Part shown: piece after piece, positions 20,705 to 54,349 of the stretch
Layout of the letters: the number at the start of each line of letters is the position of its first letter
Position numbering within the stretch: position 1 is the stretch's first letter
Virus record (IMG/VR): IMGVR_UViG_3300035698_029839
Coordinates: 62,001 to 126,000 of that record
Reading direction: 5' to 3' (one strand)
Length of the DNA: 64,000 nucleotides
Translations under genes and position numbers: made by a program
The notes under the pieces: generated by a model
What the model was told of the DNA's origin: nothing
Seen by the model: the letters and a program-made list of their open reading frames with translations, nothing else
Databases searched by the model: none

Positions 20705-21363
20705 AAAGTGAATTAGATATTTTAGCTAGTAAATTCGGCACTGATAAATGTAGTTTAAAACATAATTATGTTAAATGGTACGAATGGTATTTTGGACATA
20801 TTCAAAATAAAAAAATGAATATATTAGAGATAGGTATTCAAAAAGGATATTCGTTGTTGACATGGAATGAATATTTTAAAAATAGCAAAATCTTTGGCAT
20901 AGATAGAAAAAAACGTAGTGGATATAATAAAAAATTAAAAATAAATGGAATACAGTTTTTTATAGGAGATGGATCTGATTCTAATTTTTTATCAACAGTT
21001 TTATCCAGTGTCGAAGGAGGTTTTGATATTATTATAGATGATGCTAGTCATAATCCTGCTCATCAGATAGATAGTTTTAAATACTTATTTCCTAATTTGA
21101 ATCATGGAGGTATCTATGTTATTGAGGATCTCCAGACATCTTATTTTGATGAGTATGTTTCTTCAGGTATCTCTGCTGTTGATTATTTTAAAAGTCTAGT
21201 GGATGATATTAATTTTAATGGCAAAAATAGATATTATCAGAATTTTGATACTATAGAAAAGGAAAAAATAAAAGAAGCAACGGAATATGAAAAAAATGTA
21301 GAGTCTATTCATTTTCATATGGGTATATGTTTTATTTTCAAAAGGAATTGTAATGCTAAGTAG
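20701..21363 (+). CDS. Class I sugar O-methyltransferase (MycE-like core), copy 1
   Basis: FGTDK, ILEIGI, FDIIIDDASH and GGIYVIEDLQTSY motifs. Confidence 0.85.
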   Translation: MKSELDILASKFGTDKCSLKHNYVKWYEWYFGHIQNKKMNILEIGIQKGYSLLTWNEYFKNSKIFGIDRKKRSGYNKKLKINGIQFFIGDGSDSNFLSTVLSSVEGGFDIIIDDASHNPAHQIDSFKYLFPNLNHGGIYVIEDLQTSYFDEYVSSGISAVDYFKSLVDDINFNGKNRYYQNFDTIEKEKIKEATEYEKNVESIHFHMGICFIFKRNCNAK

Positions 21364-21832
21364 ATTTGATATAATTTCATCAGATTTGTTTTTTTATCGT
21401 TATAAGCCAGATATGGAATATTATTATGAAAAATATTGGGGAAAAGATGGTAATTTTTTATATATCAAGAACCACCCATTGGCTATATTTGCATCTGATT
21501 ATGTAAAGTACGGTAAAGAAATATTAAATAATTTAGATAATCATATTTTTATAAGATATGAATATGATAGGTATTCTAGTGCAGAGACTGTTAAAAATGA
21601 CACTCATAAATATAATGCTTCAAAGAGAATTATGGATATGGTTGATTCTATAAGGAAGTATGGTTATTGTTCTGGGAAATATGATAAATCAAAACATTTG
21701 ATAAGAGTTATTAAAACTGTCGATAAAAGATATATACAAGGGAAAGAGGTATATGTTTTAAAAACTAGAAAGCATAGAGCATCAGCATGTTGTGCTTTAG
21801 GCATAAAAAATATAAAAGTTAAAGTTGTTTAA
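21353..21832 (+). CDS. ParB/Srx-like domain protein (degenerate motif)
   Basis: DSIRKYGY...RKHRASACCALGIKNIKV; similar to 53723. Confidence 0.5.
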   Translation: MLSRFDIISSDLFFYRYKPDMEYYYEKYWGKDGNFLYIKNHPLAIFASDYVKYGKEILNNLDNHIFIRYEYDRYSSAETVKNDTHKYNASKRIMDMVDSIRKYGYCSGKYDKSKHLIRVIKTVDKRYIQGKEVYVLKTRKHRASACCALGIKNIKVKVV

Positions 21833-22971
21833 TGAAAAGAATATTATTAATAGCTACCATTTATAGAGTTGGCGAAAAAATATATCCCATTATAGAGGGT
21901 TTATCTAAAGAGTTTGAAATAGATGTTCTACATATGTTCCAGATGAGTCCTGATACAAAATTGCCTAAAGAAGGAGATTATAGGAAGTTATTTCAATCCA
22001 AATATAGTGATTATATTTGTAACCAATATTATGGACCATGCTTTATAAAAACTGGTGATATAGATGGAGAAAGATCAAGAAATTTCTTAAAAAGTTTTGA
22101 GAATATTGTAAAGAATAATAATTATTCTCTTGCTATATGGGATAATAATCAACCTACAAAGGGAGGGGCAATTTCAGAATTCTATCAAATGCTTTCAAAA
22201 TACAATATAAAAGTTATAGCTTCTCCTCATGCTAATAAAGATTATAAGAAATATAAATTAAGTAAAAGGATAGGAGCCACATATGATTATTCTTTTGTTT
22301 TTGGTGAAAAAGAAAGATTTAAATTATCTAGGATAAAGAAGAGAACATTATTTAGTGCCGATAAAATATATGAGAGGTTTTTACCTGCTGGTATACCATC
22401 TAATGATGCTCTGAAAAATTACGATAAGCCAGGTAAATACATTTTGATTATACCTAATTTTACTGAGGCTCAACCTAAAAATTCTAGATCAAGACATTCG
22501 AAACCATTTACTAAAGAAGTTTTTTTAAAATTAAAAATTCTTGAATTAAGTAATAAATATGGTTGCCCTATTGTTATTAAGGAAAAACCAAGAGCTTTTT
22601 ATAAAGAATATAAATTTAGAGATGTATTGAATAAGTATGATAATATAGAATTTTTATATTATTGTGAAGATGATAATAAGCTTATGGCAGATGCTAAAAT
22701 GGTTATTGGGTCTCCTTCAACATTTATGCTCAAACCAATTCAGTTGGGTATACCTACGGTTATTTTAAATGGTCAGGGAGAGATAGGCAATTTTTCTGAT
22801 TATCCTGGTTTGGTAGAACCTTCGTATGAGAATATTTTAAGATCTATTAAATTTCAAATGGATAATGGTAGATTTGATGATTATATTAAGAGGACTTTAT
22901 CGGGAGGATTAGATTTTACATCTACTAATTTATATGTTAATAATATAAGGAATTTAGTTTATGAGAAATGA
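21832..22971 (+). CDS. GT-B-fold transferase-like protein, copy 1
   Basis: ASPH, PAGIPSND, ILIIPNF and DDNKL.ADAKMVI..PST...KPIQLG motifs. Confidence 0.6.
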   Translation: MKRILLIATIYRVGEKIYPIIEGLSKEFEIDVLHMFQMSPDTKLPKEGDYRKLFQSKYSDYICNQYYGPCFIKTGDIDGERSRNFLKSFENIVKNNNYSLAIWDNNQPTKGGAISEFYQMLSKYNIKVIASPHANKDYKKYKLSKRIGATYDYSFVFGEKERFKLSRIKKRTLFSADKIYERFLPAGIPSNDALKNYDKPGKYILIIPNFTEAQPKNSRSRHSKPFTKEVFLKLKILELSNKYGCPIVIKEKPRAFYKEYKFRDVLNKYDNIEFLYYCEDDNKLMADAKMVIGSPSTFMLKPIQLGIPTVILNGQGEIGNFSDYPGLVEPSYENILRSIKFQMDNGRFDDYIKRTLSGGLDFTSTNLYVNNIRNLVYEK

Positions 22972-23605
22972 ATTAGATTTATTTGCTCAAAAATACGGAA
23001 CAGATAAGCGTAGCTCAAAACATTATTATACCAAATGGTATAATAATTATTTTAGAGATTTACGTGATAAAAAAATAAATATACTTGAAATAGGTATTAA
23101 AAAAGGAGCATCTGTTTTGATGTGGAGGGATTATTTTAAAAATGGTAATGTGTTTGGGATAGATATAGAGGATCATAAAAGTTATAGTCGTAAGTTAAAA
23201 GGCATAAAGTGCTTTATAGGAGATGCTTCTGATGATTCTTTTTTATCTAAAGTTGAGTCTAAAGTTGCAGGTGGTTTTGACATTATTATAGATGACGCTA
23301 GTCATGAACCCTCTCATCAGATATCTGGGTTTGAGTGTTTGTTTTCTAAGCTCAATAAAGGTGGAATTTATGTTGTAGAAGATTTGCATACATCTTATGA
23401 AAATAAGGATATATCTTCTTATATTAATGCTGTTGATTATTTTAAAAGACTTGTAGATGAAGTTAATTTTAATGGTAAGAATAAATATCAAAATTTTAAT
23501 AGGATTAAAGAAGAGATTATGAAAGAATCAACATATTATGAAAGAACAATAGAATCTATATGCTTTCATATGGGCATATGTTTTATTTTTAAGAGGAAAG
23601 TATAA
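22961..23605 (+). CDS. Class I sugar O-methyltransferase, copy 2 (paralogue of 20701)
   Basis: YGTDK, ILEIGI, FDIIIDDASH and GGIYVVEDL motifs. Confidence 0.85.
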   Translation: MRNELDLFAQKYGTDKRSSKHYYTKWYNNYFRDLRDKKINILEIGIKKGASVLMWRDYFKNGNVFGIDIEDHKSYSRKLKGIKCFIGDASDDSFLSKVESKVAGGFDIIIDDASHEPSHQISGFECLFSKLNKGGIYVVEDLHTSYENKDISSYINAVDYFKRLVDEVNFNGKNKYQNFNRIKEEIMKESTYYERTIESICFHMGICFIFKRKV

Positions 23606-24765
23606 TGAAAAAAAATATATTATTTATTACTACCACATACTTAACTGGGGAAAAAATATATCCTATTATACCAGTATTAAGTAAAATACATAATATTGAA
23701 GTTTTGAATTTATATAGTATGTCAAAACATACTGATTGGTCATTTGATTATGATCCGAGACAACGTTTTTATAATATGTGTGATAATTTAAATATAAAAA
23801 TGACGGATGGCCCATCTGTTTGTAGTGATAAATCTGTTGATATAAAAAAATATTCTGAATTTTTTGATAATTTTGAAAAAGTTTTAAGTAGTAATTATGA
23901 TTTAGTTATTATAGATAATAACTGGAAAGACAAACATATGGGGTGGAAGAGAATGTCCCAGTATTTTTCACAAAATAAGATACCCATTATTGCCAGTCCG
24001 CATGGTAATACTGGGGATAAAACTAATAGATTGCTGAAGAGGATGGGTTATCTTTTTGATTTTTCTTTTATATTTGGAGAAAGAAGAAAAGAAAATGTAA
24101 TTAGATATGAAAAAAGTATCTCTCAAGAGAATCTTTATAAAATAGATAGGATGTTTCCAGCAGGTATTCCATCTAATGACAAGTTAAAAGAATATGAACG
24201 AGGTAATAAATATATACTGATAATTCCTAATTTTACGATGCCTCCACCTAAGCATGGTAAAAATAAAAAATGGAATTGGAAACAATTTACAGTGGAGTTG
24301 TTTGATGAATTAAAAATACATAAATTAAGTGAAGATAATAATTGCCCAATTGTTATAAAACGAAAACATAGATTATTTTATAAAACAGGATTATTAGAGT
24401 CATCTTTTAAAAAATATAAAAAAATAGTTAAAATTATAGATGTTTGTGAAGATGACAATAAATTAATAGCAGATGCTAAAATGGTTATTAGCGCTCCTTC
24501 CACTATGTCTTTTAAGCCTATCCAATTGGGAGTACCTACTGTTTTATTAAGGGGTCATGGTCAGATCGGAGATTTTAGTAATTATCCTGGATTAATAGAT
24601 CCATCTTATGATAAAATTAAAAGGTCTCTTGAGCAACAGAAAGAACAGGGGAGAAATGTTGAATTTATTGCTGAAACTTTATCTGGGGGGGTGGAATATA
24701 ATTCTATACAGATACATATGGAATATATTAACAAGATTTTAACAGGAGAAATAAAGTGTCATTAA
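23605..24765 (+). CDS. GT-B-fold transferase-like protein, copy 2 (paralogue of 21832)
   Basis: Same motifs as 21832. Confidence 0.6.
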   Translation: MKKNILFITTTYLTGEKIYPIIPVLSKIHNIEVLNLYSMSKHTDWSFDYDPRQRFYNMCDNLNIKMTDGPSVCSDKSVDIKKYSEFFDNFEKVLSSNYDLVIIDNNWKDKHMGWKRMSQYFSQNKIPIIASPHGNTGDKTNRLLKRMGYLFDFSFIFGERRKENVIRYEKSISQENLYKIDRMFPAGIPSNDKLKEYERGNKYILIIPNFTMPPPKHGKNKKWNWKQFTVELFDELKIHKLSEDNNCPIVIKRKHRLFYKTGLLESSFKKYKKIVKIIDVCEDDNKLIADAKMVISAPSTMSFKPIQLGVPTVLLRGHGQIGDFSNYPGLIDPSYDKIKRSLEQQKEQGRNVEFIAETLSGGVEYNSIQIHMEYINKILTGEIKCH

Positions 24766-25292
24766 AATTACATCTTGGTTGCGGAGATAAACATATAGAT
24801 GGATATATTAATATTGATATCCGACCAATGGAAGAAGTTGATAAAGTTGATAATATAAAATATTTACGTTCATTTCAGAAAGATAGCGTTGACGTTATTT
24901 ATTCTGCTTCTGTTTTAGAGCATTTTATAAGATGGGAATATAAAAATGCTTTAAGAAGGTGGTACGAGATATTAAAGCTAGGAGGGATATTGAGATTAGG
25001 GGTTCCTGATTTTGAGGCTATTATAAAATATTATCAAAAAACAAATGATTTAGATGCAGTAATGGGATTATTGTATGGAGGTCAAGATTATGATCAAAAT
25101 TTTCATTATGTTTGTTGGGATTTTTATAGATTGAGCAATGACTTAAAAGAAGTTGGTTTTAAAAATATAAAGAGATATGATTGGAGAGATACAGAGCATT
25201 CAAATGTGGATGATTTTAGTCAATGTTATTTACCCCATATGGATAAAGATAATGGCATGTTGATGCACTTAAATGTAGAGGCAATTAAGTAA
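24756..25292 (+). CDS. Class I methyltransferase (Methyltransf_11-like)
   Basis: LHLGCG...GYINIDI, SVLEHF and GGILRLGVPDF motifs. Confidence 0.88.
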   Translation: MSLKLHLGCGDKHIDGYINIDIRPMEEVDKVDNIKYLRSFQKDSVDVIYSASVLEHFIRWEYKNALRRWYEILKLGGILRLGVPDFEAIIKYYQKTNDLDAVMGLLYGGQDYDQNFHYVCWDFYRLSNDLKEVGFKNIKRYDWRDTEHSNVDDFSQCYLPHMDKDNGMLMHLNVEAIK

Positions 25293-26272
25293 TGAGTCAA
25301 ATTGGTATTTTATTAACTAGTCGTAATAATTATGATTTTATGGAAAAGTTCTGGGTGCCCAATACTATGGGTAAATGTGACGTGAATTGTAAAGTTTTAA
25401 ATATAGATGAAGGTTCAAGTCTAGATGAAAAAGCTAAGGGCAAAATTTTATGTGAAAAATATGGTATAGATTACATGGATCGCGAAGAGCCAGGTATGCA
25501 TCATAATGTCTCTTCGGCTATACGTTTTTTTGGTGAGGAAGTTAAATATATAATATGGTTTCAACATGATTGTTGGCCTTTGCAAAGAGATTTTTTTACG
25601 AGATTTAACAGTATTGTTAATAGTGGCAAATTAGATGTTTTTGGGACTATTGGTTTTAATAGTCTTGCTCAAAATATGTTTAAAAGAAATAATGAGCATG
25701 AAGATATTATTATGGAATTTAAAGAAGAGAAAAAACCTATCGGAGTAATATCTAGGAGTGTTTTAGAAAGTGCTGGAGGAAGAGATCTTTATTATTGTGG
25801 GAAGAAAGTGGGCAAGAGAATACGATATCCTGTTGATAGGGATAAATTTTCTAAGCCATGTGCTATAGCTGTTCCAGTGTGGTATGCTATATCTGTGAAT
25901 GCTTCTTTATTTAAAAAAGAGATAGAGTTGGATAGAGGTATGCATTTTTTTAGATCTTGGGACGATATATCTTTTCAGTTTTTAAATAAAAATATATACA
26001 ATATAGTTCTTCCAGATTTTTATATAGAGCATAGACCAGATCTAAAAAGAGTTATTGGCCTGCCGCAACTGTCCGTTAAAAGAGTGAAAAAAGATGATAC
26101 CTATCATTCGGCAATTGGGTCAGGTCCAGAAGCATGGATAAAGGTATGGGGCTGGAATTTTGAAAAACCATCTACTTTTGAGAATGTTAAAAAAAGGTAC
26201 AAAGGAACTTTGCTAGAAAAATTCTATAAATATGATTATACAGCAGGCCCTTTGAAGATTTTTAATTTATAA
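25292..26272 (+). CDS. GT2-like glycosyltransferase
   Basis: ILLTSRN, LNIDEGS, WFQHDCW and SWDDISF motifs. Confidence 0.65.
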   Translation: MSQIGILLTSRNNYDFMEKFWVPNTMGKCDVNCKVLNIDEGSSLDEKAKGKILCEKYGIDYMDREEPGMHHNVSSAIRFFGEEVKYIIWFQHDCWPLQRDFFTRFNSIVNSGKLDVFGTIGFNSLAQNMFKRNNEHEDIIMEFKEEKKPIGVISRSVLESAGGRDLYYCGKKVGKRIRYPVDRDKFSKPCAIAVPVWYAISVNASLFKKEIELDRGMHFFRSWDDISFQFLNKNIYNIVLPDFYIEHRPDLKRVIGLPQLSVKRVKKDDTYHSAIGSGPEAWIKVWGWNFEKPSTFENVKKRYKGTLLEKFYKYDYTAGPLKIFNL

Positions 26273-26890
26273 TTTATCTCTCCATCCGCTAATCATTTTT
26301 TTAGGATCGAAGAGGATACCTAATCCATTATTATAAGCGCATTCTGCGTATCTGAACTGAGGGTATTCTTTTTGAAATCTTTCAATCCCCTCCCGTAGTC
26401 TGGCTTTTTTAAGAATAACATCATGCATTAATATCATACTTGTGGGTTTTATTTTTTTATGCCATAGTGACAGTTCTTTAAAAATCATATCTGGTTTATG
26501 TTTTGTATCTATGAATAAGATATCAATTGATTCGTCTTCCCAGTCCTTATATACTTCTCGACTGTCTCCTATTTTAAAATCCCAAAAATCGTAAGATCTG
26601 CATTCTGGGAGTCTTTTTAGTATTCCCCATCCTTTAAAATAGCTATCAGGTTGTATTTCTTTTATATCATAGCTATAAAGTTTTCCATCTGGTATGTAGG
26701 ATGTTGCTGTTAGAAAAGCTTGTGTAGACAAACCAGCTCTAACTCCTAATTCGACAATAGTTTTTGCTTGTTTAGAAATACATAGATCAAAAAGTAATGG
26801 AAGATGTTCACAGATATCTGTTTCTATATCTATATTTGATAGAGCTATTAAATTGTCCATCAGTTTTTTTTGTAATTCTTTTGTTTTCAT
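26267..26890 (-). CDS. Class I methyltransferase (Methyltransf_24-like)
   Basis: IVELGVRAGLST, IDILFIDTKH, ILMHD and NNGLG motifs. Confidence 0.85.
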   Translation of the reverse strand: MKTKELQKKLMDNLIALSNIDIETDICEHLPLLFDLCISKQAKTIVELGVRAGLSTQAFLTATSYIPDGKLYSYDIKEIQPDSYFKGWGILKRLPECRSYDFWDFKIGDSREVYKDWEDESIDILFIDTKHKPDMIFKELSLWHKKIKPTSMILMHDVILKKARLREGIERFQKEYPQFRYAECAYNNGLGILFDPKKMISGWRDKL

Positions 26891-26902
26891 TATTTGTTCC
26901 TT

Positions 26903-27943: not shown

Positions 27944-27945
27944 AT

Positions 27946-28866: not shown

Positions 28867-28891
28867 TTATTTATCTTTCTTATAAATTTTG

Positions 28892-28909
28892 TCGATATAT
28901 TTATATCGA
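28892..28909. promoter_or_regulatory. Palindrome TCGATATA-TT-TATATCGA in the divergent intergenic region between the two island operons
   Basis: Perfect 8-bp arms; reads TATAAATA on the - strand; matches 4101-4117. Confidence 0.62.
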
Positions 28910-28949
28910 ATTTTATAATAAAAAAGATTAATATAAGAGGAATATTAAT

Positions 28950-45227: not shown

Positions 45228-45231
45228 TAAT

Positions 45232-45834: not shown

Positions 45835-45837
45835 TTT

Positions 45838-46542: not shown

Positions 46543-46563
46543 TTATAGTTTAGGAGAATAAAA

Positions 46564-47379: not shown

Positions 47380-48308
47380 TGAAATTAATATTGTCAGTTA
47401 CTAAAAGATGTAATATGAGATGTCCTAATTGTTTGTGGATTTTAGAAAAAGGAGATTTTTTTAATAAAGACGATATGCCTCTTCAAGATGCTATAGATAT
47501 TTTTGAATATTATAAAAAAAATAAGTTAAAAAACGTAGTTTTGCAAGGAGAGGGAGAGGTTTTTTTATATCCTTATTTTAAAGAACTTTATTCTTATTTT
47601 CTTAAATCTAAAGTTGCTTTGAATGGAATTACAACTAATGGTTTGATTCTTGATAAATTTTTATATGTTGCTAAAGATGTTGGGCTAACAATTAGCTTAG
47701 ATGGATATGATAGTCAAAGTTATATGGAACATAGAGGTGGTGGGGAAGATCAATTTAACAAAGTATTAGATAATATAAGAGAAGTTTTAAAAGTTAAAAA
47801 TAGAAAAAAAATAGTTATAAATTGTATCGTCTCCCTTACTGATTATAAAAAAATACCAGGCATGATAGCACTAGCAGAATCCTTAGGCGTAGATTATATG
47901 AGATTTGGAAACTACCATCCCATAGCGGGTGATTTAAAACCTTTGTTTGATACTGATAAAGAAGTTGTTGATTTTTATAAAAATATTATTAGCAAAGATG
48001 ATTATAAAGTTAATATCACGCTGCCAGGTTTGATGAGTACAAATAAAGGGAAGCTTAAATGCAGTATGCTTAAGTGCAAAAACGTTGGTTCTGAAGGTTT
48101 TTATTCTCCATGTTGTCATATATCTACAGATGTTAAATATGGATCTTTCCCTAATGAATCAAAAAGTTTAACGGAATTTAAAAAACAATTTAGTAATGCT
48201 AAAAAAATAACCGATCTTCCAGAGCCATGTAGATTATGTCCTAGATTATTTAAAAATAGAATAATTTTTAATAAAGATAGCAAAAAGTGGAGTAAAAAAT
48301 TATTGTGA
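47379..48308 (+). CDS. Radical SAM/SPASM(twitch)-domain protein
   Basis: CNMRCPNC and TTNG motifs; C-terminal C...SPCC...CRLCP. Confidence 0.9.
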   Translation: MKLILSVTKRCNMRCPNCLWILEKGDFFNKDDMPLQDAIDIFEYYKKNKLKNVVLQGEGEVFLYPYFKELYSYFLKSKVALNGITTNGLILDKFLYVAKDVGLTISLDGYDSQSYMEHRGGGEDQFNKVLDNIREVLKVKNRKKIVINCIVSLTDYKKIPGMIALAESLGVDYMRFGNYHPIAGDLKPLFDTDKEVVDFYKNIISKDDYKVNITLPGLMSTNKGKLKCSMLKCKNVGSEGFYSPCCHISTDVKYGSFPNESKSLTEFKKQFSNAKKITDLPEPCRLCPRLFKNRIIFNKDSKKWSKKLL

Positions 48309-49255
48309 ATATACTAATAACTGTATATCCATTTGGTAAGTGTGGAGATAAACCTATTACACTTCTTGAAGGTAGGGGGTGGAATCTAATATTTAATCCT
48401 TTAGAGAGAAGATTGAAAGAAGACGAAGTTAGAGAAATGGTAAAAGGAGTGGATGCAGTAATAGCTGGAACTGAACCATATAACAGAAGAACTATTCAAT
48501 ATGCTAAAGATTTAAAAGTTATTTCTAGATCAGGAATAGGTCTTGATAGTATCGATTATCAAGCGTGTAAAGAGAAAAATATATTAGTTGCAAATACTCC
48601 AGAAGCTCCTTCTGATGCTGTGTCAGATTTAACTATTGCTCAAATTTTTAATTTATTGAGAAATATTTATATATCTAATCAATTCATTAAAAATGGCATG
48701 TGGAAAAGGTTTACAGGCTTATCAATTAGGCAAATAAAAATAGGTATTTTGGGAGTAGGTAGGATAGGTGGTAGAGTTATAAATAGATTAAAGTCATTTG
48801 ATGCAAATATTTTAGCTTGTGATGTAGATATAAATAAAGATATAGATGGAGTTATATGGGTTGATAAGGATACTTTATTTAAAGAATCTGATTTAATATC
48901 TATTCATATCCCGTTAACTAAAAAAAATTATCATTTTGTTGGTATGAATGAATTGAGCATGATGAAAAAAGGTGCATATTTAATTAATACTTCTAGAGGC
49001 AGCGTGTTGAATGAGAGAGATCTGGAATCATGTCTTATTAACCATCATCTAGCAGGGGCAGCTTTAGATGTTTTTGAAAAAGAGCCATATGAGGGATGTA
49101 TGAAGGATATGGATAATGTTCTATTGACTGCTCATCATGCTTCTTCTGATAGATTATCAAAATATAAAATGGAATTAGGAGCAGTTGAAAATTGTATAAA
49201 ACTTCTTAATGGAGAAATTCCAAAAGACATAGTTACGGAGAAAGATTTTGAATAA
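48305..49255 (+). CDS. Phosphoglycerate-dehydrogenase-like 2-hydroxyacid dehydrogenase
   Basis: SRSGIGLDSID, GILGVGRIG, LINTSRG and LDVFEKEP motifs. Confidence 0.9.
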   Translation: MNILITVYPFGKCGDKPITLLEGRGWNLIFNPLERRLKEDEVREMVKGVDAVIAGTEPYNRRTIQYAKDLKVISRSGIGLDSIDYQACKEKNILVANTPEAPSDAVSDLTIAQIFNLLRNIYISNQFIKNGMWKRFTGLSIRQIKIGILGVGRIGGRVINRLKSFDANILACDVDINKDIDGVIWVDKDTLFKESDLISIHIPLTKKNYHFVGMNELSMMKKGAYLINTSRGSVLNERDLESCLINHHLAGAALDVFEKEPYEGCMKDMDNVLLTAHHASSDRLSKYKMELGAVENCIKLLNGEIPKDIVTEKDFE

Positions 49256-50000
49256 ATTAAAAGAAGCATTAAAAAATAATAAAGTATCGTTGGGGACTTG
49301 GATTCAAATTCCTCATCCTTCTATCGTAGAAATTATTGCTCATAATTGTAGAGGTAAATTAGATTGGATGTGTATAGATATGGAGCATGGTTCTATAGAT
49401 ATAGAGTCTATGACTAATCTAATTAGAACTATTGAGAAGTATAATATCACTCCTATTGTGAGGATACCTAAGAATGATTATATATGGATTCACAGGGTTT
49501 TAGATGCTGGGGCTAAGGGTCTAGTCATACCTATGGTGAAAAGTGAATCTGAGGCATCTGATGCTGTTTTAGAGACATTGTATCCTCCGTTAGGAAATAG
49601 AAGCTTTGGATATAGTCGTGCTAATATATATGGGGCTGATTTTGAAGAATATATTAAAAGTGCTAATGACGATATAGCTATAATTATTCAAATTGAACAT
49701 ATTGATTCTATAAATGAATTAGATTTTATTTTATCTGTTAAGGGTATAGATGGGACATTTATTGGACCTTATGATCTGTCAGGATCTTTAGGAGTATCTG
49801 GAGATTTTGATAATGAAGCATATCAGAATGCTTTATCATTTTATATATCAAAATCTAATGAGCATAAAATTCCGATGGGTATTCATATTGTTAGACCGAA
49901 TTTGGAAAAAGTAAAATTTTGTAAAAATGTTGGGTATAAAATGATAGCAATTGGTACTGATGCTGTTCTTCTTGAAGAGAAATGCAAAGAAATTTTTTAA
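49248..50000 (+). CDS. HpcH/HpaI class II pyruvate aldolase
   Basis: CIDMEHG, VLDAGA, YPPLGNRS, QIEH and FIGPYDLSGSLG motifs. Confidence 0.92.
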   Translation: MNKLKEALKNNKVSLGTWIQIPHPSIVEIIAHNCRGKLDWMCIDMEHGSIDIESMTNLIRTIEKYNITPIVRIPKNDYIWIHRVLDAGAKGLVIPMVKSESEASDAVLETLYPPLGNRSFGYSRANIYGADFEEYIKSANDDIAIIIQIEHIDSINELDFILSVKGIDGTFIGPYDLSGSLGVSGDFDNEAYQNALSFYISKSNEHKIPMGIHIVRPNLEKVKFCKNVGYKMIAIGTDAVLLEEKCKEIF

Positions 50001-50010
50001 GGATATATCT

Positions 50011-50673
50011 ATGAGTAAAAATGAAGAGTTATTTTTATTTGGTAATAAGGGTAAATTAGATAATCCACCACAAGTAAAAATTATTGATATAATTCCTCTT
50101 TATCCTAATAAAGATAATATGTTTTTTATAGAAGTTGGTGCTAACAACGGAGTTGATAATGATCCAATTAGAGGTTGGGTTGAAGAATACAATTGGACAG
50201 GTATTTTAATAGAGCCTGTTGAGCAAGCATTTGAAGAGTTGAGGAGTAATTATGAAGGTATAAAAAATGTTTATTTTGAGAATGTGGCTATTTCTAACTC
50301 TGATGAAAAAAATGTTATCATGTATAAACCAAAATCTTCTAAAATAGCATCTCTTGATAAGAATCATCCTCCTATGAAAAACAAATACAAAAAAATAGAT
50401 GTTAGATTAAAAAAACTTAATGATATAGTCGATAAATATAATGTAGATCATATAGATTTGTTAAATATAGATGCGGAAGGTTATGATTTTGAAGTTATAA
50501 AGAGTTTAGATTTAAATAAGTGTAGGCCTATTATAGTTCATTATGAGCATAGGCATTTAGGTGATTGGAAAGTTGATTGTGAAACTTATTTACTTAATAA
50601 TGGATATTTTTTATGTTGGAATAGAAATAATACAATAGCAATAGATAGGGTGTTTAAGGAGAGTTTTGAATGA
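50011..50673 (+). CDS. FkbM-family methyltransferase
   Basis: FIEVGANNG, ILIEP, IDAEGYD and YEHRH motifs; start moved to ATG 50011. Confidence 0.88.
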   Translation: MSKNEELFLFGNKGKLDNPPQVKIIDIIPLYPNKDNMFFIEVGANNGVDNDPIRGWVEEYNWTGILIEPVEQAFEELRSNYEGIKNVYFENVAISNSDEKNVIMYKPKSSKIASLDKNHPPMKNKYKKIDVRLKKLNDIVDKYNVDHIDLLNIDAEGYDFEVIKSLDLNKCRPIIVHYEHRHLGDWKVDCETYLLNNGYFLCWNRNNTIAIDRVFKESFE

Positions 50674-51674
50674 AAGTTTTATATCAGGGGCCATTAAAAC
50701 AAGGGACACCATTGCCCGATTTAATAAAGATGGTTCATTATAATCATCCAAAAGTGGAATTTGTTCCTTATGAAAGAGGAAGAGAAGGAGATGTTATATT
50801 GACCCTTAATAGAACTGGAATTACTCCTGAGGATATTAATAAAAAGGATGAAATAATTAGAAAAGACATAAGAAGGATAGTTCATATCGGATCTATTCCT
50901 ACTTTTATGAAAAGAGGGCGTAACAAATATTCTGATAAAATTAGCCATGTTTTTTATAATTCCAATTTTTGTAAAAATATTATTCAGCCCACTTCCGATT
51001 TTAAAGAATTTTCTTCATTTTTAGTTTTTGGAGGGATGCCCGCTGATGATAATATGTCCCCAATAAGAGGCCCTCGTAAAATTAATGGGAACATCCATTT
51101 TATTGCTTTGGCAAAATGGTTTAAAAGACCATACAAAAGACTTCCACAAATAATTAGGCTTTATAATAAATTTTTGATAAAGGAATATCCTGATTCTATA
51201 TTGAATATTGTAGGATTTAAAAAAGATTATAGAGAAGGTAATATACATTATTATAGGAAGAGTTCTCATGACAAACGTTTGATAAGTATTTTTAAAAACT
51301 CTCATATCCAGTTAATGCCAACTCCTTTTGATACAGGTCCCAAAACTTTAGCTGAATCTCTTCATTATAGAGTTCCATTTATTTGTAGTAATAATTGTGC
51401 TGGCAAAGAGTATATAAAAATTTTAGGGAAATGCGGTATAGAAATAGAAACTGATATTTTTATTGATACTTATTCAAAATATAGAATACATCAACCTATT
51501 TCTATTATTGCTAAAAATAAATTTTACAAAAATGCACTTCCTTATGAAAAATATTTTGAAGCTGTGAAAGAAATAGTAAATAATTTTGAAGAATATACTT
51601 CATGGGAGTGGAATGAAAAATTAAATTATAAAGATCAATCTGATAAATTATATAATATACTAAAGGGTAAATAA
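50670..51674 (+). CDS. GT4-like glycosyltransferase
   Basis: FYNSNF and DTGPKTLAESLHYRVP motifs. Confidence 0.7.
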   Translation: MKVLYQGPLKQGTPLPDLIKMVHYNHPKVEFVPYERGREGDVILTLNRTGITPEDINKKDEIIRKDIRRIVHIGSIPTFMKRGRNKYSDKISHVFYNSNFCKNIIQPTSDFKEFSSFLVFGGMPADDNMSPIRGPRKINGNIHFIALAKWFKRPYKRLPQIIRLYNKFLIKEYPDSILNIVGFKKDYREGNIHYYRKSSHDKRLISIFKNSHIQLMPTPFDTGPKTLAESLHYRVPFICSNNCAGKEYIKILGKCGIEIETDIFIDTYSKYRIHQPISIIAKNKFYKNALPYEKYFEAVKEIVNNFEEYTSWEWNEKLNYKDQSDKLYNILKGK

Positions 51675-52349
51675 ATGCAATTATCTAAAAGATTAAATTA
51701 TTTAACCCATCTTCCAGTATTAAAAGCTATGTGTAAAACATTTTCTCCAACAGGTATTTTAGAATTGGGGTGTGGGAAACATAGTACTTCTTTTTTTTAT
51801 AATTATGATGGTGATATTGTGTCTTTGGAAAATGATGAAAAGTGGTGTGAAAGTATTAGAAAAATATGCCCAGATAAGGATAATTTTAAATTGATTTTTC
51901 ACGATGTCGGAGACGGAATTACTAAAAGAACAAAACATAATGAATTATCTGAAGAAAAAATTAATAATATAAATAATTTTTATGATGATATATTGTCTCG
52001 ATATAATTTGAATTTTTTATTTGTAGATCACTGGAAGTCCATTCGTTGCAGGTCTATAAGATATTTATCTCATAAATTTGACATAATAGCTTATCACGAT
52101 GCAGAAGATAAAAATAAGCAGTACTATTATAGGACTTTAATTTCTGAACCATTGGATGGTTTTTTCCATTGGATATATTGTTCTTTTACTACTCAGACTG
52201 GTATTCTAATTAATAAAAAATATAGTGATAAATTAGAAATTTTTGATAAGAATATTGAGTACTATCACGAAGAATTTTGTAAAAGTATAGGTAAAAAGTG
52301 TAAGTGTAAAATTAAAAGGATAAAAAATGAAAAAAATAATATTACTTAG
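51675..52349 (+). CDS. Class I methyltransferase-fold protein
   Basis: ILELGCGKHST, VSLEND, LFVDH and AYHD motifs. Confidence 0.65.
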   Translation: MQLSKRLNYLTHLPVLKAMCKTFSPTGILELGCGKHSTSFFYNYDGDIVSLENDEKWCESIRKICPDKDNFKLIFHDVGDGITKRTKHNELSEEKINNINNFYDDILSRYNLNFLFVDHWKSIRCRSIRYLSHKFDIIAYHDAEDKNKQYYYRTLISEPLDGFFHWIYCSFTTQTGILINKKYSDKLEIFDKNIEYYHEEFCKSIGKKCKCKIKRIKNEKNNIT

Positions 52350-53043
52350 TACAGATACAATGCATCATCGATATTTTATAAACAAACTTATTGATGAAAA
52401 CATATATATTGACAAATGCTTTTTTCAGACGGATCATCTACAGCCAAAATTTCCTGTTGCCCCTTTGTATGAGAAAGAGGAAGAGTTGTTCGAGTCGAAT
52501 AACTTCTTTAAATCGACTAGAAAAGATCTTGATAGAGTGCAGGTTGAGTATGTTCCCACATTCAATTGTAGGGAATGTATCGAACAAATCTCCGATTTGA
52601 AACCTGATTTCGGTATTGTATTTGGTGCAGGTATAATATATGTTCCTACAATAGAACTATTCAAAGATTATCTAATTAATGTGCATCGAGGTATAGCTCA
52701 AAAATACCGAGGTCTTGAATCCGATCTATGGGCGATATATCATAAAGATTATGCTAATATTGGAGTGACGGTTCATTTTGTTGAAAAAGAGCTTGATACG
52801 GGAGATATTGTCGGCCAAAAAAGGATACCTATCAATAATAATATGAAAATATGGCAGCTAAGATATCACTGGACTCTAATAGCCACGGAGTTAGTAACCA
52901 ATGCTATTGAAATGTATGTTGCAGGAAAAATGAGTGCATATAGCCAGCAAAGTAAGGGGAGATATTATTCATTCATGCCTTCGGAACTGAAAAATATTAT
53001 GGCTTCCCGCTTTAATACTTATTGTGAGAAACTCGATGAATAA
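52327..53043 (+). CDS. N10-formyl-THF-dependent formyltransferase (sugar N-formyltransferase-like)
   Basis: INVHRGIAQKYRG and GVTVHFVEKELDTGDIV motifs. Confidence 0.85.
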   Translation: MKKIILLSTDTMHHRYFINKLIDENIYIDKCFFQTDHLQPKFPVAPLYEKEEELFESNNFFKSTRKDLDRVQVEYVPTFNCRECIEQISDLKPDFGIVFGAGIIYVPTIELFKDYLINVHRGIAQKYRGLESDLWAIYHKDYANIGVTVHFVEKELDTGDIVGQKRIPINNNMKIWQLRYHWTLIATELVTNAIEMYVAGKMSAYSQQSKGRYYSFMPSELKNIMASRFNTYCEKLDE

Positions 53044-53092
53044 AAATAAGAATGACATAATATATTATATATAAATTGTAATAAGAAATTAA

Positions 53093-53710
53093 ATGAAAAA
53101 AATTAATTTAACTAATCAAGATAAAAAAGAAATTTTAGAAGTAGTAAAACTTACTAATAAAAAACATAGAAAAGATCCATATCAGGCAATTGGGGATATA
53201 AAAGGAGTTAGAAACACAGATTATAGATGCGAGTTTATGAAACTGCCAAAAGATTTCAAAGGGAAATCGGTATTAGATATAGGATGTAATTTAGGAGCTA
53301 TGTGTTATATTGCTAAAAGTAGAGGTGCGGGTCGCGTTGTCGGTATCGATTACAATACAGTTCTTTTAGATATGTCATCTAATGTGTTTTCAAGACATAA
53401 TTACGATATATCTCTTATTAGTTATGATTTAAATACTCAAGGGTATACTCCTTTGACAGAAATTTTAGGAAAAGATAAATTTGATTATATATTTGCGTTA
53501 TCAATTTATCATCATATTAACGATAAAAATGTATTATGGAATATTATTAATAATTATTGTTGCGATACTTGCTGGTTTGAAGGCCATAAAAGAAACAAGA
53601 GGGAAGAATTACAAAAAGTTTTAACACTGAATATTAAAGCAAAAAAAATAGATTTTGTAGGCAATATAGATGACCATGTTCGTAGATCAATTTTTAAATG
53701 TGTATTTTAA
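53093..53710 (+). CDS. Class I methyltransferase
   Basis: GKSVLDIGCNLG, VVGID and FDYIFALSIYHHI motifs. Confidence 0.85.
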   Translation: MKKINLTNQDKKEILEVVKLTNKKHRKDPYQAIGDIKGVRNTDYRCEFMKLPKDFKGKSVLDIGCNLGAMCYIAKSRGAGRVVGIDYNTVLLDMSSNVFSRHNYDISLISYDLNTQGYTPLTEILGKDKFDYIFALSIYHHINDKNVLWNIINNYCCDTCWFEGHKRNKREELQKVLTLNIKAKKIDFVGNIDDHVRRSIFKCVF

Positions 53711-53722
53711 AAGGAAAAGAAT

Positions 53723-54349
53723 ATGGTAAAAGGAGAAACTTCTGAAGAAAGAAAAAAGAGAAAATTAGCGAAAAAAAGAGAAAATAGAAGACAGAGGAAA
53801 GAAAGAAGAATACAGAGAGGAGAACGTCATAATAATATTTTAAGAGAAATAAAAGATATAGATGTAGAATTAATATATTATCCATATCGTACTTGGGATG
53901 AACCGTATGTAAAATATTGGAGACAAAATAATGGGCACCTATTAAGATTTATTAATTGCCCATGGGCATTATTTATTGAAGATTATGTGAGATTGGGAGA
54001 TAAGATATGGAGAGATTTAGACAATCATATTTTTATTCAATGGGAACGTGATATATTCTTAACAGCTAATAGGAAGGTAGATAGGCTGGAGAGAGAAAAG
54101 ATTGAAAAAGGTACTCATTCAATAAAAGCAGCTTTAAGGTTGATAAAATTGGCAAACAGTATACAAAAGTATGGATATTGTAAGGGGGTACATGCTGTAG
54201 ATAAGAATCTTATTAATGTTGTAGCGAATTACACATCTCCACATGGAGGTAGTGGATATAGAGTATTATGGGGGAATCATAGAGCAGCGGTATGTGCTGG
54301 TCTGGGGATGAAAAAAATAAAAGTGAGATGTTGGGATTCTTATTCTTAA
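53723..54349 (+). CDS. ParB/Srx-like domain protein with basic N-terminal extension
   Basis: NSIQKYGY...YRVLWGNHRAAVCAGLGMKKIKV motif. Confidence 0.62.
   Translation: MVKGETSEERKKRKLAKKRENRRQRKERRIQRGERHNNILREIKDIDVELIYYPYRTWDEPYVKYWRQNNGHLLRFINCPWALFIEDYVRLGDKIWRDLDNHIFIQWERDIFLTANRKVDRLEREKIEKGTHSIKAALRLIKLANSIQKYGYCKGVHAVDKNLINVVANYTSPHGGSGYRVLWGNHRAAVCAGLGMKKIKVRCWDSYS

What the first reader, a model, noticed from the sequence alone, without database searches (positions are those of the whole stretch)
21353..54349. Four ParB/Sulfiredoxin-like proteins scattered through the glycan island
Seen: 21353, 40573, 44015 and 53723 share the pattern L..S(I/L)..(Y)G...(P)I.V...Y...G.HR..A...LG...I.V (GNHR, GHHR, GSHK, RKHR). 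None has an HTH or a partner ParA, and each is embedded among GT/MTase genes. Established: the ParB/Srx fold includes CTPases and the small-molecule kinases SerK and SbnI. Inference: these are an unrecognised enzyme class in glycan tailoring, such as sugar or glycan kinases or CTP/CMP-handling enzymes linked to the three cytidylyltransferase activities.
Basis: partly seen in the sequence, partly recalled or inferred. Interest (0 to 1): 0.72.

Follow-up and report, generated by a model that had tools for sequence, protein, structure and literature searches.

The report
ParB/Srx-fold proteins in phage glycan island
Four small genes in the sugar-building island of a huge bacteriophage belong to an unannotated family with the nucleotide-binding ParB/sulfiredoxin fold, and this family sits next to, or is fused to, sugar-adding and methyl-adding enzymes in phages and bacteria alike, which points to an unstudied step in glycan decoration.

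Summary
The four ORFs (21353, 40573, 44015, 53723) are homologous. A profile built only from outside sequences finds exactly these four among 1132 ORFs of the 298-kb phage record (E 1.6e-51 to 4e-23).

AlphaFold2 models (pLDDT 93-94) have a ParB/Srx core. For 53723, the top 33 re-aligned PDB matches are all ParB, Noc, KorB, Srx, SerK or SbnI (Z up to 7.7). No Pfam, PHROGs or NCBIfam model detects any of the four.

The family has about 382 clusters at 50% identity. There is no HTH, and no ParA in the record. Copies lie in GT/methyltransferase islands of related huge phages (3-5 copies each) and in bacterial surface-glycan loci. Fusions exist to GT4, GT-A+MTase, SAM MTase and B12-radical-SAM enzymes.

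The four split into three subtypes. 44015 and 40573 keep extra conserved polar residues (His, Tyr; Glu in 44015). 53723 and 21353 have lost them.

The conserved partners are methyltransferases and GT4s, not the cytidylyltransferases.

Function is inferred, not shown. Most likely they are ATP/CTP-binding modules coupled to a neighbouring transferase. My leading guess is phosphotransfer to the glycan (about 0.35-0.4). A non-catalytic nucleotide-gated partner is nearly as likely. I class this as a new variant of a known fold family.

The parts
44015..44551 (+). Type I ParB/Srx-like protein (178 aa, Box II = GHHR). It keeps the full conserved set S-x-H46, T68, Y70, S94-L-x-x-G98-Y, R120, E132, G136-H-H-R139, D158.
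   Evidence: E 1.6e-51. ESM Atlas model neighbours include RgpF and methyltransferase fusion clusters.
40573..41067 (+). Type II ParB/Srx-like protein (164 aa, Box II = GSHK; R in most orthologues). It has the conserved R43-H44, F51-D52 and D110-G-x-R-L-D-G-S-H118.
   Evidence: AF2 model pLDDT 93.6. Fold matches.
53723..54349 (+). Type III ParB/Srx-like protein (208 aa, Box II = GNHR). It has a Lys/Arg-rich N-terminal helix (residues 7-37) and lacks the family's conserved His, Tyr and Glu.
   Evidence: AF2 model pLDDT 93.4. Fold matches (Z 7.7).
21353..21832 (+). Type III ParB/Srx-like protein (159 aa, Box II = RKHR, G replaced by R). It is a paralogue of 53723.
   Evidence: 36% identity, E 8e-31; E 4.1e-23.
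43346..44005 (+). SAM methyltransferase (Methyltransf_11/25) directly upstream of 44015. It is a candidate partner.
   Evidence: The orthologous arrangement occurs in L001. The complex prediction gave no answer.
53093..53710 (+). SAM methyltransferase (Methyltransf_23/25/31, weak Methyltransf_9) directly upstream of 53723. The gene pair is conserved.
   Evidence: A methyltransferase with the same Pfam profile precedes the orthologue P0003 in L024, with a 44-nt overlap. In L015 a methyltransferase with the same Pfam profile lies directly upstream of a copy whose subtype was not assigned.
20701..21363 (+). SAM methyltransferase (Methyltransf_24) that overlaps the start of 21353 by 11 nt.
41064..41972 (+). 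GT4 glycosyltransferase (302 aa) that overlaps the end of 40573 by 4 nt. The order unknown ~270 aa, type II protein, GT4 ~303 aa is conserved.
   Evidence: The same order occurs in L002/L003 and L015.
39736..40569 (+). Conserved protein of unknown function (277 aa) upstream of 40573. It is part of the conserved trio.
   Evidence: no Pfam. Counterparts of 273 aa and 268 aa occur in L002/L003 and L015.
54407..55480 (+). Cytidylyltransferase-like protein (357 aa) downstream of 53723. This adjacency is seen in some relatives but not all.
   Evidence: L004 has it two genes away. It is absent next to the orthologues in L023 and L024.
8801..61009 (.). Glycan biosynthesis and tailoring island of more than 52 kb. 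It encodes GT1/GT2/GT4 enzymes, more than 12 SAM methyltransferases, two NeuB, three cytidylyltransferases, RmlA/RmlD-like enzymes, UDP-sugar dehydrogenases, radical SAM enzymes, two MptE/Maf-like proteins and a formyltransferase. It has no multi-pass membrane protein.

Best explanation
The four genes are paralogues, in three subtypes, of an unannotated family with the ParB/sulfiredoxin (ParB-CTPase) fold. They are single-domain soluble proteins. A family-specific helical insert sits on a core that keeps the two nucleotide-contacting elements of the fold: the Box I helix-loop (S-I-x-x-x-G) and the Box II P-motif (G-x-H-R).

They do not act on DNA as partition proteins. Each works with a neighbouring glycan-tailoring transferase: a SAM methyltransferase, a GT4 glycosyltransferase, or in relatives a B12-radical-SAM methylase.

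The mechanism I think most likely is that the type I and type II proteins (44015, 40573) bind ATP or CTP and transfer a phosphoryl group to a hydroxyl of the sugar or glycan acceptor, as the fold does for serine in SerK/SbnI and for a sulfinate in Srx. The partner then methylates or glycosylates that phosphate or the marked residue. This is the kinase-plus-methyltransferase logic of WbdD on a different fold. The type III proteins (53723, 21353) have lost the extra conserved His, Tyr and Glu and probably act as non-catalytic nucleotide-binding partners of their upstream methyltransferases.

Shown: homology, fold, family distribution, gene neighbourhoods, fusions. Inferred: nucleotide binding, phosphotransfer, physical pairing, and the target of the glycan.
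For: - Homology of the four.
- Fold: for the 53723 model the top 49 Foldseek PDB hits are all ParB/Srx-fold proteins, many with bound ADP, ATP, CDP or CTPgS. The VIA re-alignment gives Z 7.7 for Noc, Z 7.3-7.5 for M. xanthus ParB (rmsd 1.5-2.1 A over 74-77 residues, 22-23% identity), 6.7 for Srx, 6.0 for SerK and 5.6 for SbnI at 29% identity. Unrelated rows score 4.2 or less.
- The 40573 model gives the same families at weaker scores. AlphaFold DB cluster matches at probability 1.0 are named ParB/Sulfiredoxin domain proteins.
- Box II His is kept in 97% and Arg in 99% of 147 sequences (four window proteins, the L014 fusion, 142 cluster representatives). Type I also conserves H46, T68, Y70, R120, E132 and D158.
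- The best PDB sequence matches of the family profile are SerK (E 0.04-0.09) and SbnI (E 0.14), over the GHHR segment. Relatives give sub-threshold SerK and parB_part hits.
- Fusions: GT4 + domain (P0120), B12-radical-SAM + domain (P0080), domain + Methyltransf_11 (P0115), GT-A + Methyltransf_11 + domain (L014). AlphaFold DB fusions include FkbM and other methyltransferases, a heptosyltransferase and an O-antigen/teichoic export protein.
- Neighbourhoods: copies in five other huge-phage contigs, in a Ca. Magnetobacteriaceae MAG and in another cellular contig nearly always have a GT or methyltransferase as direct neighbour, often with overlapping reading frames.
- Related huge phages carry 3 and 5 copies inside their islands.
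- Published precedent: ParB-fold fusions to SAM methyltransferases bind ATP, and a Box II R-to-A change abolishes binding (PMC12704722). SerK is a ParB-annotated kinase (PMC5120207).
Against: - No biochemical data exist for any member.
- PDB fold matches are moderate (Foldseek E 0.02 or above, Z below 8). PF02195 does not detect the proteins.
- SerK and SbnI use an extra C-terminal domain of about 150 residues for substrate binding, which is absent here.
- The domain is fused to several chemically different enzymes, which fits a generic accessory role at least as well as a dedicated kinase.
- Two of the four lack the putative catalytic residues, and 21353 has lost the Box II glycine.
- The co-fold of 44015 with its upstream methyltransferase gave a score of 0.01. 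The tool classes this as no answer.
- With about 23% of island genes being methyltransferases, three of four upstream methyltransferases has a chance probability of about 0.04 (my calculation). Adjacency inside this window alone is therefore weak. The fusions and the conserved pairs carry the argument.
Confidence: 0.45

Rival explanations
1. The proteins are non-catalytic, nucleotide-gated accessory subunits. They bind ATP or CTP and, like other ParB-fold switches, change association state. In doing so they dimerise, activate or target the partner methyltransferase, GT or radical-SAM enzyme without transferring phosphate.
For: - The fold is best known as an NTP-dependent switch (PMC12704722).
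- Fusions to four different enzyme classes and paralogue-specific conserved pairs with overlapping genes suggest a generic partner module.
- Type III copies keep Box II but lack the other conserved polar residues.
Against: - Type I and II conserve more polar residues (His, Tyr, Arg, Glu, Asp) than nucleotide binding alone would need.
- The complex prediction gave no support, although the tool counts that as no evidence either way.
- No dimerisation or clamp domain is present.
Confidence: 0.3
2. The proteins handle nucleotide-sugars. The ParB/Srx pocket binds the CMP, CDP or NDP handle of an activated sugar. The protein then presents it to the methyltransferase, GT or radical-SAM partner, or hydrolyses it.
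For: - All partner enzyme classes can act on nucleotide-linked substrates (my own knowledge, not tested here).
- The island encodes three cytidylyltransferases and an RmlA-like enzyme.
- Canonical ParB binds CTP and CDP, and structures with these ligands are among the best matches.
Against: - Adjacency to cytidylyltransferases is not conserved.
- Nucleotide specificity cannot be predicted from sequence or co-folding for this fold (PMC12704722).
- No ParB-fold protein is known to me that binds a nucleotide-sugar.
Confidence: 0.12
3. The proteins are DNA-directed. They would be ParB-like nucleases or DNA-binding partners of DNA methyltransferases or DNA glycosyltransferases, and the island would hypermodify the phage genome rather than a protein or polysaccharide.
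For: - In phages the ParB fold is commonly fused to N6/N4 DNA methyltransferases (PMC12704722).
- Phage GTs can build glycans on DNA (bioRxiv 10.1101/2023.12.21.572611, title and abstract only).
- The island has no membrane or export genes.
- 53723 has a very basic N-terminal helix.
Against: - Partner methyltransferases are small-molecule or O-methyltransferase types (Methyltransf_11/23/24/25, TylF, FkbM; the P0115 domain resembles BioC/UbiG). None is N6_N4 or Dcm.
- Cellular homologues sit in surface-glycan loci with an ABC transporter, MBOAT, a teichoic-acid transferase and RmlA.
- There is no HTH or nuclease domain.
- NeuB and Maf-like genes point to protein O-glycosylation.
Confidence: 0.08
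4. The shared motif is a chance resemblance among unrelated small ORFs in an AT-rich genome.
For: Three of the pairwise BLASTP comparisons are not significant, and no curated library recognises the proteins.
Against: - An independent profile finds exactly these four at E of 4e-23 or better.
- Profile-profile links.
- Two confident models share the same core.
- Conserved orthologues exist in other phages.
Confidence: 0.01

Closest known systems
ParB-CTPase fold 'orphan' proteins and their SAM-methyltransferase fusions (Kaljevic et al., PNAS 2025, PMC12704722)
   Same: Same core fold with Box I and Box II. They are orphans without ParA, HTH or a dimerisation domain, enriched on phages and mobile elements, and fused or adjacent to SAM methyltransferases. 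The bacterial SAM-methyltransferase fusions tested there bind ATP.
   Different: That survey was seeded with PF02195, which does not detect this family. It interprets the phage methyltransferase fusions as DNA methyltransferases and never mentions glycosyltransferases, glycans or polysaccharides (0 occurrences). Here the context is glycan islands, with GT4, GT-A and B12-radical-SAM fusions and 3-5 paralogues per phage.
Free serine kinases SerK (archaea) and SbnI (Staphylococcus)
   Same: ParB/Srx N-domain used as an ADP/ATP-dependent phosphotransferase on a small hydroxyl substrate. Box II reads G-H-H-R as in 44015. They are the best, though weak, PDB sequence matches of the family profile (E 0.04-0.4) and match structurally at Z 5.6-6.0, with up to 29% identity over the core.
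   Different: SerK and SbnI are about 240-255 aa with a C-terminal substrate domain that is absent here. Only residues up to about 94 of those chains align. The NCBIfam SerK model does not hit the four proteins. The helical insert between the first strand and Box I is specific to this family.
Sulfiredoxin (Srx)
   Same: A minimal single-domain ParB/Srx protein that uses ATP to phosphorylate a substrate. It is the top Foldseek match (1xw4, E 0.024, probability 0.98) and scores Z 6.7.
   Different: The Srx motif G-G-C-H-R has a catalytic Cys before the His. Here that position is N, H, S or K. The biological context differs (peroxiredoxin repair).
Canonical ParB/Noc/KorB CTP-dependent DNA clamps
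   Same: They give the highest structural Z-scores over the N-terminal nucleotide-binding domain (Z 6.0-7.7, rmsd 1.5-3.6 A).
   Different: No HTH, no C-terminal dimerisation domain, no ParA in the record. Box II is H-R instead of R-R. The genes are embedded in sugar-metabolism operons.
WbdD-type kinase-methyltransferase chain terminators of O-antigen synthesis (my own knowledge, not tested here)
   Same: It is a functional analogy only. A kinase and a SAM methyltransferase are coupled, fused in WbdD, to put a methyl-phosphate on a glycan. Here a candidate phosphotransferase is coupled or fused to SAM methyltransferases in glycan loci.
   Different: The WbdD kinase has a protein-kinase-like fold, not ParB/Srx. 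No phosphate or methyl-phosphate product is known for these loci.

Membership tests
ParB/Srx (ParB-CTPase) fold superfamily | Alpha/beta core of the ParB N-terminal domain | tested here: met
   AF2 models have pLDDT 93.4 and 93.6. For 53723 the top 33 VIA rows are all ParB/Srx proteins, Z 4.4-7.7, against 4.2 or less for unrelated rows. Foldseek probability is up to 0.99. 40573 is weaker but matches the same families. 44015 rests on its ESM Atlas model. 21353 rests on homology to 53723.
ParB/Srx (ParB-CTPase) fold superfamily | Box II P-motif G-x-x-R | tested here: met
   GHHR (44015) and GNHR (53723) fit. GSHK (40573) has K in place of R; most orthologues have R. RKHR (21353) has lost the G, as have 6 of the 147 sequences. 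Family-wide, H is kept in 97% and R in 99%.
ParB/Srx (ParB-CTPase) fold superfamily | Box I helix plus loop before the central strands | tested here: met
   The conserved S-I-K-x-x-G-Y helix-loop precedes the two strands and Box II. It is diverged in 40573 (N-M-K-K-V-I). It aligns with the ParB N-domain.
ParB/Srx (ParB-CTPase) fold superfamily | Recognition by the Pfam ParB_N model PF02195 | tested here: not met
   No hit for the four at E up to 1. No hit in the whole genome at E up to 10. None of 30 family members hit. Only the distant fusion P0115 reaches E 4e-4, below the cut-off.
ParB/Srx (ParB-CTPase) fold superfamily | Binding of an NTP or NDP | not testable with these tools
   This needs DRaCALA, ITC or a structure. 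The literature says co-folding cannot give specificity (PMC12704722).
Canonical ParB of ParABS systems | HTH DNA-binding domain and C-terminal dimerisation domain | tested here: not met
   The proteins are 159-208 aa. No HTH_ParB or ParB_C hit. The models show only the core, the helical insert and one terminal helix.
Canonical ParB of ParABS systems | Partner ParA ATPase gene | tested here: not met
   A PF01656 search of the 297.7-kb record finds only a sub-threshold P-loop hit (E 0.007, 14 bits) outside the window. The record is estimated to be 62% complete.
SerK/SbnI free serine kinases | ParB/Srx N-domain with D-G-H-H-R | tested here: inconclusive
   44015 has I-G-H-H-R. The family profile aligns to SerK residues 62-93 at E 0.04-0.09 and to SbnI at E 0.14-0.4, which is not significant on its own.
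SerK/SbnI free serine kinases | C-terminal substrate-binding domain (total length about 240-255 aa) and a match to the family model | tested here: not met
   Structural alignments end at about residue 94 of SerK and about 85 of SbnI. NCBIfam NF053625 gives no hit for the four.
Sulfiredoxin | Catalytic Cys in G-G-C-H-R | tested here: not met
   The residue before the invariant His is K, S, H or N in the four proteins.
ParB-fold + DNA (N6/N4) methyltransferase proteins of phages | Partner or fused methyltransferase of the N6_N4 or other DNA-methyltransferase type | tested here: not met
   Adjacent and fused methyltransferases hit Methyltransf_11/23/24/25/31, FkbM and TylF. The P0115 methyltransferase resembles DVU_1556, BioC and UbiG.

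The most novel reading that the evidence does not exclude
These proteins define a new functional branch of the ParB/Srx fold: glycan- or sugar-directed phosphotransferases (or nucleotide-gated switches) that form obligate two-component units with SAM methyltransferases, GT4 glycosyltransferases or B12-radical-SAM methylases. These units would install phosphate-based or phosphate-dependent decorations, such as methyl-phosphate caps or phosphodiester-linked sugars, on cytoplasmically assembled glycans of huge-phage virions and on bacterial surface glycans. Inactive paralogues (type III) would serve as regulatory partners.
Probability: 0.3. Interest if true: 0.8.

Novelty: new variant of a known kind. 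Interest (0 to 1): 0.62.

Why it matters
The ParB-CTPase fold has only recently been recognised as a general NTP-binding module beyond chromosome segregation. The published survey was seeded with PF02195, which misses this family entirely.

If the family does act in glycan tailoring, it adds a new biological arena to the fold: carbohydrate decoration in huge phages and in bacterial envelopes. It would also give a handle on the many uncharacterised methyltransferase and GT genes in such islands, and it suggests concrete, cheap experiments (nucleotide binding, phosphotransfer, partner pull-downs).

It also draws attention to an island of more than 52 kb in a huge phage that encodes only soluble glycan enzymes. 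Its product and target are unknown.

Tried and rejected
- Pfam, PHROGs and NCBIfam scans of the four proteins gave no family. PF02195, PF24392 and PF22674 searches of the genome gave nothing.
- tblastn against 50,697 phage records found no match for 53723 or 44015.
- Profiles of the three narrow subfamily alignments against PDB sequences gave only chance hits: HGPRT, SLFN14. Only the wider alignment A6 brought up SerK and SbnI, and weakly.
- The wide VIA search with the 40573 model put COMMD and ribosomal helical matches at or above the ParB/Srx rows (Z 5.6 or less). On its own it is not decisive for that protein.
- The co-fold of methyltransferase 43346 with 44015 scored 0.01, classed as no answer and not used as evidence.
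'relatives' is not available for a virus record. A systematic count in cellular genomes was therefore not done.
- The contigs carrying the fusion proteins P0080, P0115 and P0120 were too short to give context.
- I considered a MeOPN-like pathway (cytidylyltransferase + APS-kinase), suggested by L004. I rejected it for this window because no APS kinase or PNK3P is in the genome.
- I considered the cytidylyltransferase as the conserved partner of 53723. I rejected it because its orthologues have other downstream genes.
I could not map the conserved His, Tyr and Glu onto the nucleotide pocket. Their equivalence to ParB P-motif 1 is my inference only.

Full report
WHERE THE WINDOW LIES

The window is bases 62001-126000 of a single 297,710-bp IMG/VR virus record. 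The record is linear and CheckV estimates it 62% complete. It has 31% G+C and almost all genes are on one strand. It carries 33 clustered tRNA genes and a tmRNA. It is therefore a fragment of a huge tailed phage.

Relatives found through the genes studied here are records of 219 kb, 188 kb, 351 kb and a complete 548 kb.

THE OBSERVATION

The four ORFs are real and lie at the stated coordinates. The correct assignment is 21353 = RKHR, 40573 = GSHK, 44015 = GHHR, 53723 = GNHR.

Evidence that they are homologous:
- 21353 and 53723 are clear paralogues (36% identity, E 8e-31).
- The remaining pairs are not significant by BLASTP. Alignments of each protein with its own homologues are related by hhalign. 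The 53723 family vs the 44015 family gives 87% probability, E 4e-6, over 133 columns. The 44015 family vs the 40573 family gives 71%, E 4e-5, over 106 columns. The 53723 family vs the 40573 family gives only 14%, but the alignment is centred on the same motif.
- A profile search of 1.84 billion cluster representatives found 382 clusters at E of 1e-3 or better. Most are stand-alone proteins of 150-250 aa. Several match two of the window proteins at once.
- A profile built from 138 of those outside representatives finds exactly the four ORFs among 1132 ORFs of the phage record (E 1.6e-51 to 4.1e-23), and nothing else up to E = 10 (one search agrees).

THE FOLD

No curated library sees these proteins:
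- Pfam gives nothing at E up to 1.
- PF02195 finds nothing in the whole record at E up to 10.
- None of 30 family members matches any Pfam family meaningfully.
- PHROGs and NCBIfam give nothing.

AlphaFold2 models with family alignments are confident: 40573 has pLDDT 93.6 and pTM 0.86; 53723 has pLDDT 93.4 and pTM 0.85.

For 53723:
- The top 49 Foldseek hits in the PDB are all ParB/Srx-fold proteins: sulfiredoxin with ADP/ATP, Noc, ParB with CDP/CTPgS, SbnI with ADP, KorB, PadC, SerK. The best is E 0.024 at probability 0.98.
- Re-alignment gives Z 7.7 for Noc.
- M. xanthus ParB scores Z 7.3-7.5, with rmsd 1.5-2.1 A over 74-77 residues at 22-23% identity.
- Srx scores 6.7, SerK 6.0 and SbnI 5.6 (the last at 29% identity).
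- Unrelated rows score 4.2 or lower.

For 40573 the same families appear with weaker scores. In the Foldseek-independent search they are mixed with helical chance matches.

AlphaFold DB cluster matches for both models are 'ParB/Sulfiredoxin domain-containing protein' at probability 1.0. The ESM Atlas searches agree.

The ParB/Srx core is about 75-80 residues. It consists of a first strand, the Box I helix-loop, two strands, the Box II helix and a last strand. Between the first strand and Box I lies a family-specific helical insert. The fold assignment is therefore supported. Membership in the Pfam family as currently defined is not.

THREE SUBTYPES

I aligned 147 sequences (the four window proteins, the L014 fusion and 142 cluster representatives).
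- Box II is nearly invariant: G 95%, H 97%, R 99%.
- Box I (S-I-K-x-x-G-Y) is well kept.
- Most members also conserve a further set, numbered as in 44015: an S-P-H motif (His46, 71%), Thr68, Tyr70 (87%), Arg120, Glu132 (61%) and Asp158.

The subtypes are:
- Type I: 44015 has the whole set, except that its S-P-H motif reads S-S-H (Ser in place of Pro at position 45). The bacterial members P0082 and P0071 keep it all. P0112 and the fusion proteins P0115, P0120 and L014 keep His46, Tyr70, Glu132 and Box II but vary at Thr68, Arg120 and Asp158.
- Type II: 40573 keeps the His and Tyr and has its own acidic cluster (E-D-G-x-R-L-D-G-S-H).
- Type III: 53723 and 21353 have W/L for the His, F for the Tyr, and no Glu. 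21353 has also lost the Box II glycine.

From its position about ten residues after the first strand, the S-P-H histidine may correspond to the phosphate- and Mg-contacting motif that follows strand 1 in ParB. This is my inference and I could not test it, because model coordinates are not exposed.

CONTEXT IN THE WINDOW

From at least 8.8 kb to 61 kb the window is one island of soluble glycan enzymes:
- GT1/GT2/GT4 glycosyltransferases
- at least 12 SAM methyltransferases (Methyltransf_11/23/24/25, TylF-like, FkbM)
- two NeuB paralogues
- two CTP_transf_3 genes and one CTP_transf_like cytidylyltransferase
- RmlA-, RmlD- and GDP-mannose-dehydratase-like enzymes
- two UDP-sugar dehydrogenases
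- three radical SAM proteins
- two MptE/Maf-like proteins
- two 2-hydroxyacid dehydrogenases
- aldolases and a formyltransferase

A hydropathy scan finds no multi-pass membrane protein. The island therefore has no flippase, polymerase, initiating phosphoglycosyltransferase or transporter of its own. Together with the Maf-like and NeuB genes, this suggests a cytoplasmic acceptor such as virion proteins. That is inference.

Direct neighbours of the four genes:
- 21353: upstream Methyltransf_24, overlapping by 11 nt.
- 40573: downstream GT4, overlapping by 4 nt.
- 44015: upstream Methyltransf_11; downstream a Maf-like gene.
- 53723: upstream Methyltransf_23/25/9-like; downstream the CTP_transf_like gene.

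About 23% of island genes are methyltransferases. The chance of three or more of four upstream neighbours being methyltransferases is therefore about 0.04. This is suggestive but not strong on its own.

CONTEXT ELSEWHERE

This is where the case becomes strong.

Copy number and location:
- The related 219-kb and 548-kb phage records hold 3 and 5 copies. The five copies of the 548-kb record lie within 34 kb.
- Every homologue with usable flanks sits among GT and methyltransferase genes.

Conserved micro-synteny:
- The order 'unknown ~270 aa, type II protein, GT4 ~303 aa' occurs in the window, in L002/L003 and in L015.
- A methyltransferase lies directly upstream of a ParB-like copy in the window, L002, L004, L015 and L024, with reading-frame overlaps of 44-52 nt in L024 and L002.
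- One L015 copy lies between a methyltransferase and a B12-radical-SAM gene.

Domain fusions:
- GT4 + domain (P0120).
- B12-binding/radical-SAM + domain (P0080).
- Domain + Methyltransf_11 (P0115). Its domain reaches ParB_N at E 4e-4 and TIGR00180 at E 3.8e-5.
- GT-A + Methyltransf_11 + domain in viral contig L014.
- AlphaFold DB and Atlas neighbours include fusions to FkbM and other methyltransferases, RgpF, a heptosyltransferase, a radical SAM protein and an O-antigen/teichoic acid export protein.

Cellular genomes:
- In a Candidatus Magnetobacteriaceae MAG the gene lies between two GTs. Nearby are an ABC transporter, an FkbM methyltransferase, B12-radical-SAM genes and an MBOAT/ACP module.
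- In another contig, which carries a Phe-tRNA synthetase gene, the gene follows an FkbM methyltransferase. The locus also has RmlA, epimerases, GT4, CTP_transf_3 and a teichoic-acid-type glycerophosphotransferase.

WHAT IS NOT SUPPORTED

The proposed link to the cytidylyltransferases is weak. Only 53723 adjoins one. Its orthologues adjoin an epimerase (L023, L024) or a PNK3P-like phosphatase (L004).

An APS-kinase/PNK3P module seen in L004 is absent from this genome.

Nothing computed here shows catalysis.

HOW IT MOST LIKELY WORKS

Shown: a nucleotide-binding fold with both base- and phosphate-contacting motifs kept; no DNA-binding parts; and obligate genomic coupling to group-transfer enzymes of glycan synthesis.

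From the literature:
- Box II arginine is needed for NTP binding across the fold.
- ParB-fold fusions to SAM methyltransferases bind ATP.
- Nucleotide preference cannot be read from sequence or from co-folding (PMC12704722).
- SerK, long annotated as ParB, is an ADP-dependent kinase of free serine (PMC5120207).

The family's best PDB sequence matches are SerK and SbnI, over the G-H-H-R segment, though only at E 0.04-0.4.

My preferred reading, at about 0.35-0.4 for the chemistry itself, has two parts:
- Types I and II are phosphotransferases acting on a sugar or glycan hydroxyl. The adjacent methyltransferase or GT then acts on the product. This resembles the kinase-methyltransferase logic of WbdD, but on another fold.
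- Type III proteins are degenerate, nucleotide-binding but non-catalytic partners of their methyltransferases.

The alternatives rank as follows:
- Nearly as likely (about 0.3): all of them are nucleotide-gated accessory subunits without transfer chemistry. This fits the variety of fused enzymes.
- Less likely (about 0.12): they bind the nucleotide handle of activated sugars.
- Unlikely (about 0.08): they are DNA-directed. This is disfavoured by the types of methyltransferase involved and by the bacterial surface-glycan contexts.

A co-fold of 44015 with its upstream methyltransferase scored 0.01. The tool says this must not be counted either way.

COMPARISON WITH WHAT IS KNOWN

The nearest described group is the set of divergent 'orphan' ParB-CTPase fold proteins of mobile elements and their SAM-methyltransferase fusions (PMC12704722).

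This family differs in four ways:
- It is invisible to the PF02195 model used there.
- It sits in a glycan context. That paper contains no mention of glycosyltransferase, glycan or polysaccharide.
- It has GT and radical-SAM fusions.
- It has a multi-paralogue organisation in huge phages.

It is not a canonical ParB (no HTH, no dimerisation domain, no ParA). It is not a sulfiredoxin (no catalytic Cys). It is not a SerK/SbnI orthologue (no C-terminal domain, no model match).

Glycan gene clusters in jumbo phages are themselves known (PMC7824862), and virion glycosylation is known in mycobacteriophages (cited in PMC12619734). Neither source mentions a ParB-like component: 'ParB' occurs 0 times in either text.

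VERDICT

I class it as a new variant of a known kind. It is a new, unannotated family of a known fold in a new functional setting.

Interest is 0.62. A specialist on the ParB-CTPase fold or on bacterial and phage glycobiology would find it worth bench work. The mechanism remains open.

Noticed in passing
whole genome record (window = bases 62001-126000 of it): The record is a 297.7-kb fragment of a huge phage, estimated 62% complete. Nearly all genes are on one strand. It has a cluster of 33 tRNA genes at 246-258 kb and a tmRNA at 177.3 kb (tag DTSYAKAA). Relatives include a complete 548-kb record.
   Followed up: partly
window 8801-61009: A glycan island of more than 52 kb encodes only soluble enzymes: two NeuB, three cytidylyltransferases, two Maf/MptE-like proteins and more than 12 methyltransferases. 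It has no flippase, polymerase, initiating transferase or transporter. The product and its acceptor (virion protein, DNA, or host carrier) are unknown.
   Followed up: partly
window 53723-53836 (residues 1-38 of the 208-aa protein): A Lys/Arg-rich N-terminal extension is predicted as one long helix (residues 7-37). It is partly shared by the orthologues P0001-P0003. It could bind nucleic acid or an acidic glycan. It remains unexplained.
   Followed up: no
window 26267-28866 (- strand): This is the only minus-strand block in the island: a Methyltransf_24 O-methyltransferase, a radical SAM/SPASM protein and an unknown 305-aa protein. It coincides with a local reversal of GC skew, which suggests an inserted or inverted cassette.
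   Followed up: no
window 57457-58224: An ORF with weak matches to phage endonuclease I and DUF7487 sits between the UDP-sugar dehydrogenase genes and the RmlA-like gene. It may be a homing-type endonuclease inside the sugar-nucleotide operon.
   Followed up: no
L014:3-1823 (IMGVR_UViG_3300031227_004885): This is a natural three-domain protein: GT-A (PF03407) + Methyltransf_11 + ParB/Srx-like domain. The ORF reaches the edge of the fetched locus and may be longer. Its architecture recalls multi-domain GT/methyltransferase enzymes of giant viruses (my own knowledge).
   Followed up: partly
L001:10552-12561 (219-kb relative) and protein P0061: Mobile-element traces lie near family members. An NDP-sugar epimerase with an intein (Intein_splicing hit) lies directly downstream of P0007. 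One family representative (P0061) is joined to an endonuclease VII domain.
   Followed up: no
window 38766-40569; L002:8286-9999; L015:3298-4999: Two consecutive proteins without any Pfam match (about 300 and 270 aa) always precede the type II ParB-like gene and its GT4. They form a conserved four-gene module of unknown function.
   Followed up: no
L004:9444-11602: In one relative, the 53723-type gene is followed by a PNK3P-like phosphatase, a CTP_transf_like gene and an APS-kinase-like gene. This set is reminiscent of phospho- or cytidylyl-activated decoration pathways. The phosphatase and the kinase are absent from the window's genome.
   Followed up: partly
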